Source: Octopus vulgaris
Lineage: Eukaryota
NCBI GenBank assembly: GCA_951406725.2
Contig: OX597819.1
Span: 2,666,001 to 2,730,000 of the forward strand
Direction: 5' to 3'
Length of the DNA stretch: 64,000 nt
A program made the translations under genes and the position numbers. The notes under the pieces are model-generated. The model worked only from the letters and a program-made list of their open reading frames with translations. It had not been told where the DNA came from and did not search any database. This document shows, one piece after another, positions 50,631 to 51,151 of the stretch (position 1 is its first letter; every line of letters starts with the position of its first letter).

Positions 50631-51145
50631 TTTTATCCTTAATTTTAAATTTATATTTTTCACCGGAATAGTTCAATACTGAATTTTTGTTCTGAATAGG
50701 CAAATTGTTACTGAAATGCATTGCGAATAAGCCCGCCATTTTCATAGATATGTAAAGATAAACATTCGTACATGCTACGACGAATTCTACGGTTGGCTGT
50801 CGGGTATGCTATATTGTGTTTTTTCCTTACATGTCTTGAGTTCGTTGCACTGAAGAGCATAGAATGCATATTCTGCATTGATTGCGAAATCACAGGTGAT
50901 ATGTAACTAAATTCTATTTTTAAATGACTTGCTTTGAAGTTTTGCATTCGGTACAATTTGTTTATTTTAGTAGTTTTGACTGCAAGAGTCCCTTCTAGTG
51001 TGCAGTACCTATGAATAATAGTACCCTCTATATAATATAAATAAATATTTTCAAAGTGGAAAAATTTACAGATTTTTTCTCTTACGAGGTTTTTCATGCT
51101 AACTACTGATAATTTCTTATAAAGCTTTTATCCTTAATTTTAAAT

Positions 51146-51151
<6 letters not shown>
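50631..51151 (+). mobile_element. Non-coding HHR cassette (469 bp) bounded by exact 26-bp direct repeats; putative non-autonomous Penelope-derived or retrozyme-like element
   Basis: TTTTATCCTTAATTTTAAATTTATAT at 50631-50656 and 51126-51151. CpG-rich interior, HHR at 50844, AATAAA at 51040. Confidence 0.6.
50844..50907 (+). ncRNA. Type I hammerhead ribozyme, canonical core, apparently intact
   Basis: Stem I GTTGCA/TGTAAC (6 bp, one GU); core CTGAAGA 50850-50856; stem II GCA...TGC with inner AATGCA/TGCATT; GAA 50886-50888; stem III ATCAC-AG-GTGAT; predicted cleavage after AUA at 50901. Folded by eye. Confidence 0.8.

What the first reader, a model, noticed from the sequence alone, without database searches (positions are those of the whole stretch)
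50631..51151. Intact hammerhead in a 469-bp cassette bounded by exact 26-bp direct repeats
Seen: all core nucleotides are canonical (CUGAAGA, GAAA, AUA), helices I-III form, the cassette is CpG-rich, and the flanking 26-mers are identical, suggesting a young insertion. No ORF with recognisable homology. Inference: 26 bp is long for a TSD, so it may instead be terminal redundancy from reverse transcription slightly more than once round a ~495-nt circular RNA, or a Penelope-type tail. It lies about 9 kb upstream of the first PTGR3 coding exon.
Basis: partly seen in the sequence, partly recalled or inferred. Interest (0 to 1): 0.85.

Follow-up and report, generated by a model that had tools for sequence, protein, structure and literature searches.

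The report
Hammerhead retrozyme copy, Penelope-style insertion
The cassette is one ordinary, moderately aged copy of a roughly 494-base non-coding mobile element that carries a hammerhead ribozyme and was pasted into a (TA)n microsatellite in the manner of Penelope-like retrotransposons; its 26-base "direct repeat" is the element's own start copied again at its end, not a target-site duplication.

Summary
A canonical type I hammerhead lies at 50844-50907, with cleavage after 50901. The exact 26-mers lie 495 bp apart and are really a 33-nt repeat with one mismatch.

The cassette is multi-copy in its 2.8 Gb genome. Nearly every sampled copy has the same plan:
- an optional inverted 5' arm that starts at one fixed TA-rich tract;
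- a 5'-truncated unit;
- a full unit;
- the first ~19-26 nt of the next unit.

Most copies sit in (TA)n. So the 26-mer is internal sequence, a Penelope-type tail or partial tandem, and not a TSD.

At least six sister families keep the core and helix III while helices I and II change by compensatory substitutions (94.8% of cells paired, against 20-46% in slid controls). The ribozyme is therefore under selection, although Rfam's model misses it.

The genome also holds an abundant Penelope-like element with an intact 781-aa RT/GIY-YIG ORF. It uses the same (TA)n targets and has the same tail behaviour, which makes it the likely mobiliser. That link is inferred; no sequence is shared.

The window copy is 2.8% from the family consensus, so it is not especially young. 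It has a single hammerhead, so it cannot release a unit-length RNA by itself. Whether the template was a circle is unresolved. Verdict: a new member of a known kind, the metazoan non-LTR retrozymes.

The parts
50624..50630 (+). Remnant of the upstream, 5'-truncated unit: the last 7 nt of the unit (ATAAAGA = consensus positions 488-494). This is the true 5' end of the insertion.
   Evidence: It matches the consensus unit end. The internal copy at 51119-51125 reads ATAAAGC, which is the one mismatch of the 33-nt repeat.
50631..51125 (+). One full unit of family A (495 nt here, 494 in the consensus).
   Evidence: 97.2% identical to the consensus of 24 full copies. 86 scored matches and 2593 first-look candidates in the genome.
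50631..50656 (+). First 26 nt of the unit (left copy of the 26-mer).
   Evidence: The same sequence starts the unit in nearly every sampled copy.
50844..50907 (+). Type I hammerhead ribozyme. Helix I 50844-49/50902-07; CUGAAGA 50850-56; helix II 50857-85; GAA 50886-88; helix III 50889-92/50897-900. Predicted cleavage between 50901 and 50902.
   Evidence: Read. Sole descriptor hit in the window, 0.01 expected. Covariation across sister families. 228 + 414 exact core/helix III matches in the genome against 0 for reversed-pattern controls.
51024..51048 (+). Internal TA-rich tract (CCCTCTATATAATATAAATAAATAT, consensus 394-418). In other copies this is the fixed outer end of the inverted 5' arm. 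I infer it is a second priming site on (TA)n.
   Evidence: Of the 14 A-family loci (of 27) with an inverted arm, 11 start at consensus position 418, next to (TA)n. The equivalent position in family B is 343.
51126..51151 (+). 3' 'tail': the first 26 nt of the next unit (right copy of the 26-mer). This is the 3' end of the insertion.
   Evidence: In 24 of 27 distinct A-family loci the element ends after unit position ~19-26 (two more carry a diverged tail). The join runs into a TA-type microsatellite in about 24 of 27, and in three others into (CA)n, (ATCT)n or a degenerate TA-rich stretch.
51153..51186 (.). (TA)n microsatellite: the target/landing site at the 3' junction.
   Evidence: About 24 of 27 A copies have a TA repeat at the 3' junction and about 21-23 of 27 at the 5' flank. 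The window copy is one of the few without (TA)n on its 5' side.
50708..51127 (-). Antisense open frame: 139 codons here, 172 codons in the family consensus read as a tandem or circle. Probably not coding.
   Evidence: 0 of 2000 shuffles reach 172 codons. However, there is no Pfam hit, the frame is absent from families B-E, and it is intact in only 3 of 24 A copies.

Best explanation
The 528 bp at 50624-51151 are a 1.07-unit copy of a ~494-nt non-coding, non-autonomous retroelement that carries one type I hammerhead. It is a metazoan 'non-LTR retrozyme'.

Inferred life cycle:
1. Loci holding two or more hammerheads are transcribed.
2. The ribozyme cuts after A17 and releases unit-length RNA. 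A host RNA ligase may then close it into a circle.
3. The RT/GIY-YIG protein of a Penelope-like element nicks a (TA)n microsatellite.
4. The TA-repeat 3' end pairs with the element's ...UAAAUUUAUAU tract (unit positions ~16-26) and primes cDNA there. This fixes the 3' end.
5. Synthesis runs for more than one unit length and stops at a variable point. This gives the 5'-truncated upstream unit, which in the window copy is only 7 nt long.
6. In about half the copies the other target strand primes on a second TA-rich tract (unit positions 394-418). This gives an inverted 5' arm, analogous to twin priming of L1.

The 26/33-nt 'direct repeat' is therefore the overlap between the start of the unit and the tail. 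It is not duplicated target DNA.

What is shown: the copy architecture, the target preference, the ribozyme covariation, and the co-resident intact PLE with the same target and tail behaviour.

What is inferred: self-cleavage, circularisation, which RT acts, and the priming details.

The window copy has a single hammerhead, so it could cut its own transcript once but could not release a unit-length RNA. It is most likely inert offspring.
For: Multi-copy element with shared ends. Mapping the unit onto 30 loci gives the plan [rc(x..418)] + [y..494] + [1..494] + [1..~26]. In 24 of 27 distinct loci the element ends at unit position 19-26.

Target: a TA-type repeat lies at the 3' junction in ~24 of 27 loci and at the 5' flank in ~21-23 of 27. 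Three others join (CA)n, (ATCT)n or a degenerate TA-rich stretch, and the join then sits earlier in the tail, which suggests microhomology.

Inverted arms: 14 of 27 loci have one, and 11 of those start at position 418. Blast coordinates overlap by 1-7 nt at most arm/direct junctions. Family B (460-nt unit) repeats the whole plan.

Ribozyme:
- Full canonical core and three helices.
- Only descriptor hit in the window, 0.01 expected.
- 642 exact core+helix III matches in the genome against 0 in controls.
- Across 13 representatives of at least 5 families, 94.8% of cells are paired against 20-46% when partners are slid. 9 pairs show double-sided changes. 40 cells are double-changed, against 0-4 when slid.
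- Within family A the hammerhead diverges less than the rest of the unit (1.8% against 3.0%, Fisher p=0.007).

Whole-unit RNA is strongly structured when folded as a circle: z = -4.9 for family A and -7.3 for family B (30 shuffles each).

Candidate partner:
- GIY-YIG gives 5955 first-look candidates, many within a 781-aa open frame.
- L043 shows a 456-nt pLTR pair at 99.3% identity, flanked by (TA)n.
- Its copies end at either of two TA-rich points 37 nt apart, which is the PLE 'tail'.

Literature: non-LTR retrozymes and the target-primed-circle model (PMC7229834); PLE partial tandems, inverted 5' copies, 30-40-bp tails and (TA)n bias (PMC8557442); retrozymes as PLE derivatives (bioRxiv 10.64898/2026.07.22.740005).
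Against: - Rfam's Hammerhead_1 and other hammerhead models do not report this motif or its short-helix-II sisters, even at E<=10.
- The catalytic fold is 4.4 kcal/mol above the MFE of the isolated 76-mer. In the whole-unit MFE the family A hammerhead is paired otherwise.
- The cleavage triplet AUA and A at position 7 are allowed but not the commonest. Cleavage was not tested.
- There is no sequence similarity between the unit and the 781-aa PLE. No hammerhead was found in that PLE. The partnership therefore rests on shared target and architecture only.
- The one PLE ORF fragment near a sister-family copy (L068) looks coincidental.
- The window copy lacks (TA)n on its 5' side.
- The sampled copies are the best-scoring matches only, about 60 loci. 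Length and 5'-end distributions are therefore biased.
Confidence: 0.8

Rival explanations
1. The redundancy specifically records rolling-circle reverse transcription of a hammerhead-processed, ligated ~494-nt circular RNA. This is the reader's first alternative, and a sub-hypothesis of the best explanation.
For: - Copies run through the ribozyme cleavage site without interruption and reach up to 2.6 units.
- One inverted arm also crosses the unit boundary (L013).
- No insertions or scars occur at the cleavage site in the copies listed.
- The unit folds as a highly structured circle.
- The model is published for metazoan retrozymes (PMC7229834).
Against: - The HHR-less 4.8 kb PLE shows the same partial-tandem-plus-tail plan. 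The HHR-less family X shows the same inverted arm with a fixed outer end and the same (TA)n target. The architecture therefore does not need a circle.
- Multi-unit genomic loci exist that could give linear multimeric templates.
- No RNA data are available.
Confidence: 0.35
2. The element is PLE-mobilised, but the >1-unit structure comes from the PLE reverse transcriptase's general behaviour on linear RNA: template switching from the 5' end of one RNA to another, or copying unprocessed multimeric transcripts. On this reading the hammerhead only trims transcripts or is a passenger.
For: - The same partial-tandem-plus-tail plan appears in the HHR-less PLE781, and the inverted arm and (TA)n target appear in HHR-less family X.
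- PLE literature reports partial tandems and tails in clades without hammerheads (PMC8557442).
Against: - The hammerhead is conserved with compensatory changes across at least 5 families, so it is selected for something.
- No extra bases at unit junctions or at the cleavage site were seen in the sampled copies.
Confidence: 0.4
3. The 26-mers are a target-site duplication made by a LINE-type or other insertion.
For: They flank the cassette exactly.
Against: The same 26-mer ends the element at nearly every other sampled locus, on many chromosomes with unrelated flanks. It is also followed by the rest of the unit in multi-unit copies.
Confidence: 0.01
4. The repeat arose by local slippage or duplication at this locus.
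For: The sequence is AT-rich and lies next to a microsatellite.
Against: The same structure occurs genome-wide.
Confidence: 0.01
5. The family is a SINE-like element mobilised by a LINE that makes or uses simple-repeat tails. The (TA)n would then be a templated tail rather than a target.
For: - 5' truncation and inverted 5' arms are also LINE (L1 twin-priming) features.
- LINE EN/RT copies are present in the window.
- The window copy has (TA)n only at its 3' side.
Against: - (TA)n flanks both sides in most copies.
- Other microsatellites substitute at some loci.
- No tRNA-like head is present.
- >1-unit copies with a short tail are a PLE trait, not a LINE trait. The resident PLE uses the same targets.
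Confidence: 0.06
6. The hammerhead-like motif is inactive or fortuitous.
For: - Rfam does not detect it.
- The catalytic fold is not the MFE.
- The descriptor's chance rate of 0.01 per 64 kb would give hundreds of chance hits in 2.8 Gb.
Against: - Covariation in helices I and II with an invariant core across families.
- 642 exact core matches against 0 in controls.
- Lower divergence than the rest of the unit.
Confidence: 0.05

Closest known systems
Metazoan non-LTR retrozymes (Cervera & de la Pena 2020, PMC7229834; Li, Clavereau & Pollet 2026, bioRxiv 10.64898/2026.07.22.740005)
   Same: - A small (here 460-494 nt), AT-rich (32% GC), non-coding repeat unit with one type I hammerhead per unit.
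- Copies range from monomers to short multimers.
- It coexists with PLEs.
- There is no LTR, PBS or PPT.
- The unit length lies within the 51-972 bp range reported in 2026.
   Different: - The sampled copies are dispersed 1.05-2.6-mers with a fixed 3' end, inverted 5' arms and a (TA)n target, not long tandem arrays.
- The window copy has a single ribozyme.
- Helix III is a stable 4 bp plus CAGG loop, and the cleavage triplet is AUA.
- RNA circles were not tested.
- I found no paper in the searched library that reports microsatellite targeting for retrozymes.
Penelope-like elements, EN+ clades with a CX2-5CxxC linker (Neptune/Nematis type) (PMC8557442)
   Same: - The insertion anatomy: a 5'-truncated partial tandem (pLTR-like), an adjacent inverted 5'-truncated copy, a short terminal 'tail', and a bias for (TA)n.
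- A resident PLE with a 781-aa RT/GIY-YIG ORF shows all of these at the same kind of site.
   Different: - The cassette encodes no RT or EN.
- No sequence similarity to the resident PLE was detected.
- No hammerhead was detected in that PLE, whereas published PLEs of these clades are said to carry one in the pLTR.
Classical type I hammerheads (newt satellite 2, Schistosoma Sm-alpha, Rfam RF00163)
   Same: - Helix I is open, and helices II and III are closed.
- All core positions are present: C3 U4 G5 A6 N7 G8 A9, G12 A13 A14, A15.1-U16.1, H17.
   Different: - It is not detected by the Rfam covariance model.
- Helix II is long (29 nt) in family A.
- The triplet is AUA rather than GUC.
- Helix III is longer than in the minimal or dimeric PLE and newt motifs.
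L1 twin priming (5' inversion of LINE-1 insertions)
   Same: An inverted 5' segment is joined to a direct 3' segment with a few nucleotides of overlap. This is explained by the second target strand priming internally on the RNA.
   Different: Here the internal priming site is fixed, at one TA-rich tract that matches the (TA)n target. The enzyme would be a GIY-YIG PLE, not an APE-type LINE. This comparison is my inference, not a tested mechanism.
Plant LTR retrozymes (PMC4918200)
   Same: They are non-autonomous, hammerhead-bearing and thought to spread via circular RNA.
   Different: Plant elements have type III hammerheads inside true LTRs, plus PBS/PPT, 4-bp TSDs, high GC and Gypsy-type mobilisation. 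None of these is present here.

Membership tests
Hammerhead ribozyme, type I | Conserved catalytic core (C3 U4 G5 A6 N7 G8 A9; G12 A13 A14; A15.1-U16.1; H17 not G) | tested here: met
   All positions are present at 50850-50856, 50886-50889 and 50900-50901. They are invariant in all sister families, though the pattern used to find those families fixed part of the core.
Hammerhead ribozyme, type I | Three helices around the core, helix I open, supported by covariation | tested here: met
   Helix I has 6 bp, helix II has 3+5 bp and helix III has 4 bp. 94.8% of cells are paired against 20-46% when slid. 9 pairs carry compensatory changes: 5 in helix I and 4 in helix II. Helix III never varies, so it is uninformative.
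Hammerhead ribozyme, type I | Match to the curated covariance model (Rfam RF00163 or other hammerhead families) | tested here: not met
   No hammerhead match at gathering score or at E<=10, either for the window copy or for sister families with a short helix II. RF00163 does find other hammerheads in the same genome.
Hammerhead ribozyme, type I | Site-specific self-cleavage | not testable with these tools
   This needs in vitro transcription. The predicted cut is between 50901 and 50902.
Metazoan non-LTR retrozyme | Small non-coding, AT-rich unit with one type I hammerhead and no LTR/PBS/PPT | tested here: met
   The unit is 494 nt and 32% GC. There is no Pfam hit and no conserved ORF across families.
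Metazoan non-LTR retrozyme | Head-to-tail repeats (dimers to multimers), so that two ribozymes flank a unit | tested here: inconclusive
   The family has 1.05-2.6-unit copies, and a few carry 2-3 hammerheads (L008/L009, L026/L027, L029). The window copy is 1.07 units with one hammerhead. No long arrays were seen in the biased sample.
Metazoan non-LTR retrozyme | Expressed as linear and circular unit-length RNA | not testable with these tools
   No RNA data are available. The only indirect point is that the unit folds as a circle far more stably than shuffles (z -4.9 and -7.3).
Metazoan non-LTR retrozyme | Coexistence with PLEs in the same genome | tested here: met
   5955 first-look GIY-YIG candidates and intact 781-aa PLE ORFs in the genome. 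There are also PLE remnants inside the window.
Penelope-like element (autonomous) | ORF with PLE-type RT plus GIY-YIG endonuclease | tested here: not met
   The cassette has no such ORF. It is at most a non-autonomous rider.
Penelope-like insertion architecture | 5'-truncated partial tandem, adjacent inverted 5' copy, short terminal tail, microsatellite bias | tested here: met
   Family-wide. The window copy itself shows the partial tandem (7 nt), the tail (26 nt) and (TA)n at its 3' side, but no inverted arm.
Penelope-like derivative (retrozyme = pLTR relative) | Sequence similarity between the unit and the pLTR of a resident PLE | tested here: not met
   There is no blastn match (word 7, E<=0.01) between the unit and the PLE loci L031-L044. 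The only match in that set, in L038, is to a retrozyme-like relative next to a truncated PLE copy, not to PLE sequence. Only a handful of PLE families could be sampled.
Target-site duplication | Flanking repeat differs from copy to copy and is present once at empty sites | tested here: not met
   The same 26-mer occurs at nearly every sampled copy. Empty sites could not be examined.
tRNA-derived SINE | tRNA-like head with a Pol III promoter | tested here: not met
   ARAGORN finds nothing in 50400-51600.

The most novel reading that the evidence does not exclude
The copies of this family and its sisters may be a natural record of how a Penelope-like RT/GIY-YIG enzyme works. On this reading both strands of a nicked (TA)n target prime by microhomology on two defined TA-rich tracts of a hammerhead-processed circular RNA. 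The polymerase then runs more than once round the circle. That would explain the pLTR, the 'tail' and the inverted arm of PLEs in one scheme. It would also give a 0.5 kb substrate with which the still-unknown PLE integration mechanism could be reconstituted.
Probability: 0.3. Interest if true: 0.6.

Novelty: new member of a known kind. Interest (0 to 1): 0.4.

Why it matters
The finding itself is one ordinary, probably inert copy of a repeat.

Its family is a tidy case for an open question: how animal hammerhead 'retrozymes' move, and how Penelope-like elements build their odd partial-tandem and inverted insertions. Here the 3' end, the start of the inverted arm and the target are all TA-rich and fixed. 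Several sister families allow comparison, and an apparently intact PLE with the same habits sits in the same genome.

This supports the published idea that retrozymes ride on PLEs. It also suggests a concrete, testable priming scheme.

A practical point follows as well. Rfam's hammerhead model misses this whole group, with about 640 intact cores in one genome, so censuses based on that model undercount animal hammerheads.

Tried and rejected
- Rfam scans of the window, the cassette, PLE loci and sister-family loci gave no hammerhead. I relied on a hand descriptor and on covariation instead.
- TSD and slippage readings were rejected by the shared 26-mer.
- I searched for an autonomous partner by sequence. 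blastn of the unit against 15 PLE-containing loci found only other retrozyme-like copies. A PLE ORF fragment 650 nt upstream of a family E hammerhead (L068) proved to be an unrelated degenerate copy separated by a (CTT)n tract.
- Hammerhead searches in the 781-aa PLE found none.
- The antisense 172-codon frame is statistically odd, but it is not conserved in families B-E and it decays in family A copies. I treat it as non-coding.
- A tRNA-like head was not found.
- The PTGR3 context was not found.
- Organism identity could not be established.
I did not try to get those letters by another route.
- An empty-site test was not possible, because no relatives or other individuals are available.
- Thermodynamic support for the isolated hammerhead is absent (z = -0.94).
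Full report
WHAT IS THERE

The sequence at 50400-51400 contains the two identical 26-mers TTTTATCCTTAATTTTAAATTTATAT at 50631-50656 and 51126-51151. The repeat finder extends them to 33 nt with one mismatch (50624-50656 / 51119-51151, spacing 495).

The hammerhead reads as follows:
- GUUGCA, helix I 5' strand, 50844-50849;
- CUGAAGA, 50850-50856;
- a 29-nt helix II, 50857-50885, with a G-C, C-G, A-U base and an inner AAUGC/GCAUU stem;
- GAA, 50886-50888;
- helix III, AUCA/UGAU with loop CAGG, 50889-50900;
- A17 at 50901;
- UGUAAC, helix I 3' strand, 50902-50907.

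A structural descriptor of my own hits only this site on both strands of the 64 kb window. It hit 0.01 times per dinucleotide-shuffled window.

The cassette's CpG observed/expected ratio is 0.97, against 0.30 for the window.

Two negative results must be kept in view:
- Rfam reports no hammerhead here, at gathering score or at E<=10.
- The catalytic fold of the isolated 76-mer (-12.3 kcal/mol) is less stable than its MFE (-16.7; z = -0.94).

THE CASSETTE IS A MEMBER OF A DISPERSED FAMILY, AND THE 26-MER IS PART OF THE ELEMENT

The window's own genome is 2.8 Gb in 227 contigs; the window is C6:2666001-2730000. A search with the 469 bp between the repeats gave 86 scored matches at 92-98% identity on many chromosomes, out of 2593 first-look candidates.

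I mapped the 495-nt unit onto the 30 loci returned (27 distinct). Nearly every copy is built the same way:
- in 14 of 27, an inverted segment whose outer end is at unit position 418 in 11 of the 14;
- then a 5'-truncated unit that starts anywhere;
- then a full unit, 1-494;
- then the first ~19-26 nt of the next unit.

In multi-unit copies the 26-mer is simply followed by the rest of the unit. It is therefore internal sequence, and the 'direct repeat' is the overlap between the start of the unit and a short terminal tail.

In the window copy the upstream truncated unit is only 7 nt long (ATAAAGA, 50624-50630). The insertion is thus 528 bp, or 1.07 units.

TARGET

At the 3' junction about 24 of 27 copies run straight into a TA-type microsatellite. 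Three others run into (CA)n, (ATCT)n or a degenerate TA-rich stretch, and there the element ends a few bases earlier (unit position 19-24). This pattern is what microhomology-guided priming would give.

About 21-23 of 27 copies also have a TA repeat on the 5' side. The window copy is one of the few that do not.

The fixed start of the inverted arm is a second TA-rich tract (CCCTCTATATAATATAAATAAATAT, unit 394-418, window 51024-51048). Blast coordinates overlap by 1-7 nt at most arm/direct junctions.

My reading is an inference by analogy with L1 twin priming. One strand of the nicked (TA)n target primes on the ...UAAAUUUAUAU tract, which fixes the 3' end. The other strand primes on the internal tract, which gives the inverted arm.

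THE RIBOZYME IS CONSERVED BY SELECTION

Next to one family A copy lies a diverged sister, family B. Its unit is 460 nt, it is 72-79% identical to family A over the 3' half, and it has the same architecture.

Its hammerhead keeps the core and helix III. Helix I is GACUUG/CAAGUC instead of GUUGCA/UGUAAC, and helix II is a 4-bp stem with an AGAG loop.

Genome-wide pattern searches anchored on the core and helix III gave these counts:
- 414 exact matches with CUGAUGA;
- 228 exact matches with CUGAAGA;
- 0 for the reversed-pattern controls.

The matches fall into at least six families with different helices I and II.

I aligned 13 representatives and scored them against the hammerhead structure:
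- 94.8% of cells are paired, against 20-46% when partners are slid by 1-3 columns.
- 9 pairs carry changes on both sides, 5 in helix I and 4 in helix II.
- 40 cells are double-changed, against 0-4 in the slid controls.

Helix III and part of the core were fixed by the search pattern, so their invariance says nothing.

Within family A the hammerhead is less diverged than the rest of the unit (1.8% against 3.0%, p=0.007).

Rfam's model also misses the short-helix-II sisters, although it finds other hammerheads in this genome. I therefore file the motif as a hammerhead on defining features and covariation, not on the Rfam model.

Folded as circles, the family A and family B units are far more stable than shuffles (z = -4.9 and -7.3). 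This fits an RNA whose structure matters. In the family A MFE the ribozyme is paired otherwise.

AGE AND COMPETENCE OF THIS COPY

The window copy differs from the consensus of 24 full copies by 14 substitutions and one indel, or 2.8%. The range among the 24 copies is 9-22 substitutions. Five of the 14 are CpG-to-TpG/CpA changes.

Across copies, CpG positions diverge 1.7 times faster than other positions.

The copy is therefore of average age for the family. At that divergence, two identical 26-mers are not evidence of youth, and the 33-nt repeat already has a mismatch.

The copy holds a single hammerhead. Its transcript could be cut once, but no unit-length RNA could be released. Only the few copies with two or three ribozymes (for example L008/L009, L026/L027, L029) could act as sources.

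THE LIKELY MOBILISER

A GIY-YIG search of the genome gave 5955 first-look candidates. Many lie in an open frame of exactly 781 aa.

[quoted passage not shown] This is a Penelope-like element of the Neptune/Nematis kind. The clade assignment rests on the linker motif alone, as described in PMC8557442.

Locus L043 shows a 4.8 kb unit with 456-nt pseudo-LTRs that are 99.3% identical, flanked on both sides by (TA)n.

Copies of this PLE end at either of two TA-rich points 37 nt apart. This is the published 30-40-bp PLE 'tail' (PMC8557442).

The resident PLE thus has the same target and the same partial-tandem-plus-tail behaviour as the cassette's family.

I found no sequence similarity between the two and no hammerhead in this PLE. 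The partnership is inferred from behaviour, not from shared sequence.

Published work proposes this link. Retrozymes were suggested to be mobilised by PLEs via target-primed copying of circular RNA (PMC7229834), and were recently argued to be PLE derivatives (bioRxiv 10.64898/2026.07.22.740005).

WHAT REMAINS OPEN

The architecture does not tell a circular template from a linear one. The HHR-less PLE shows the same partial tandem and tail. An HHR-less ~230-bp family shows the same inverted arm with a fixed outer end. That family is immediately downstream of the cassette (51197-51460), with at least 1348 first-look candidates.

I therefore keep 'rolling circle on a hammerhead-made circRNA' (0.35) and 'general PLE behaviour on linear RNA' (0.40) as competing versions of the same overall explanation.

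I did not analyse length or 5'-end distributions statistically.

COMPARISON AND VERDICT

The element works like a metazoan non-LTR retrozyme and meets its sequence-level criteria. It inserts like a PLE. It is not an autonomous PLE, not a plant LTR retrozyme, not a tRNA SINE, and its flanking repeat is not a TSD.

It is a new family, in fact a group of families, of a known kind.

I did not find the following described for retrozymes in the searched literature: the consistent (TA)n targeting, the two fixed TA-rich priming tracts, and the failure of the Rfam model on about 640 intact cores.

The claim of a PTGR3 exon ~9 kb downstream was not confirmed. That region holds LINE EN/RT sequence, and no ADH_zinc_N domain was found on the contig. 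This does not strictly exclude a first exon that lacks the domain.

Noticed in passing
window 51197-51460: Directly after the cassette's (TA)n lies a copy of another repeated, hammerhead-less, non-autonomous family ('X'). The direct part is ~230 bp at 51220-51445, with a 23-nt inverted arm at 51197-51219. It has at least 1348 first-look candidates genome-wide, and inverted arms elsewhere end at one fixed internal point. Its 3' end (..ACCCTTAATTAATTTTATAT + (TA)n) resembles the cassette's 3' end. One microsatellite has thus been hit twice by PLE-style insertions.
   Followed up: partly
window 50708-51127 (-), and the family A consensus: There is an antisense open frame of 139 codons here. In the consensus read as a tandem or circle it is 172 codons, which is longer than one unit. 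0 of 2000 shuffles reach 172. It has no Pfam hit, is not conserved in sister families, and is intact in 3 of 24 copies. It is probably non-coding, but its length is unexplained.
   Followed up: partly
window 55545-57096 (+) and 36049-37356 (-): Two degenerate Penelope-like RT/EN remnants. The first is 44% identical at the protein level to the resident 781-aa PLE and carries 10 stops. The second is only 26% identical and belongs to a different clade.
   Followed up: partly
L043 (G000:C16:20834500-20842500), also L037, L042, L044: An apparently intact, abundant Penelope-like element. It has a 781-aa ORF (RT, CX4CXXC linker, C-terminal GIY-YIG), 456-nt pseudo-LTRs at 99.3% identity, (TA)n on both sides, two alternative 3' ends 37 nt apart, and no detectable hammerhead.
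   Followed up: partly
L046-L057, L039 (~130-212 minus strand and 451-540 plus strand): The genome holds other hammerhead types that Rfam does detect. One is a ~42-nt minimal motif (GUAC CUGAUGA GACCC..GGGUC GAAAC..GUC GUAC). Another is ~85-107 nt with a long helix II and a palindromic CGAUCG at helix III, found as an inverted pair beside a PLE copy. No PLE ORF lies within 1.5 kb of the Rfam hits that were fetched (L046-L057).
   Followed up: partly
L042/L044 minus strand at the PLE 3' microsatellite; families A, B, E, X: Several unrelated-looking non-autonomous families end in a similar motif, CCTTA(A/T)TT..(T/A)AAAT followed by (TA)n. This may be a shared recognition or priming signal. The 781-aa PLE ends in a looser version (..CATTTTTTACAAAT + TA repeat).
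   Followed up: no
No ADH_zinc_N hit was found anywhere on contig C6.
   Followed up: partly
window 52939-53925 (+): A 328-codon open frame lies in a stretch with very strong GC skew (-0.45 to -0.75). It has no Pfam hit. It is possibly low-complexity or repeat sequence.
   Followed up: no
window 43814-44593 (-): An open frame with a weak PHD-finger match (E = 6e-4, below Pfam's cut-off). It may be an exon or a transposon-derived ORF.
   Followed up: no
L008 (contig C57, 50 kb) vs L009 (C13): The same family A insertion with identical flanks appears on a small unplaced contig and on a chromosome. This is probably an uncollapsed haplotig or an assembly duplicate.
   Followed up: no
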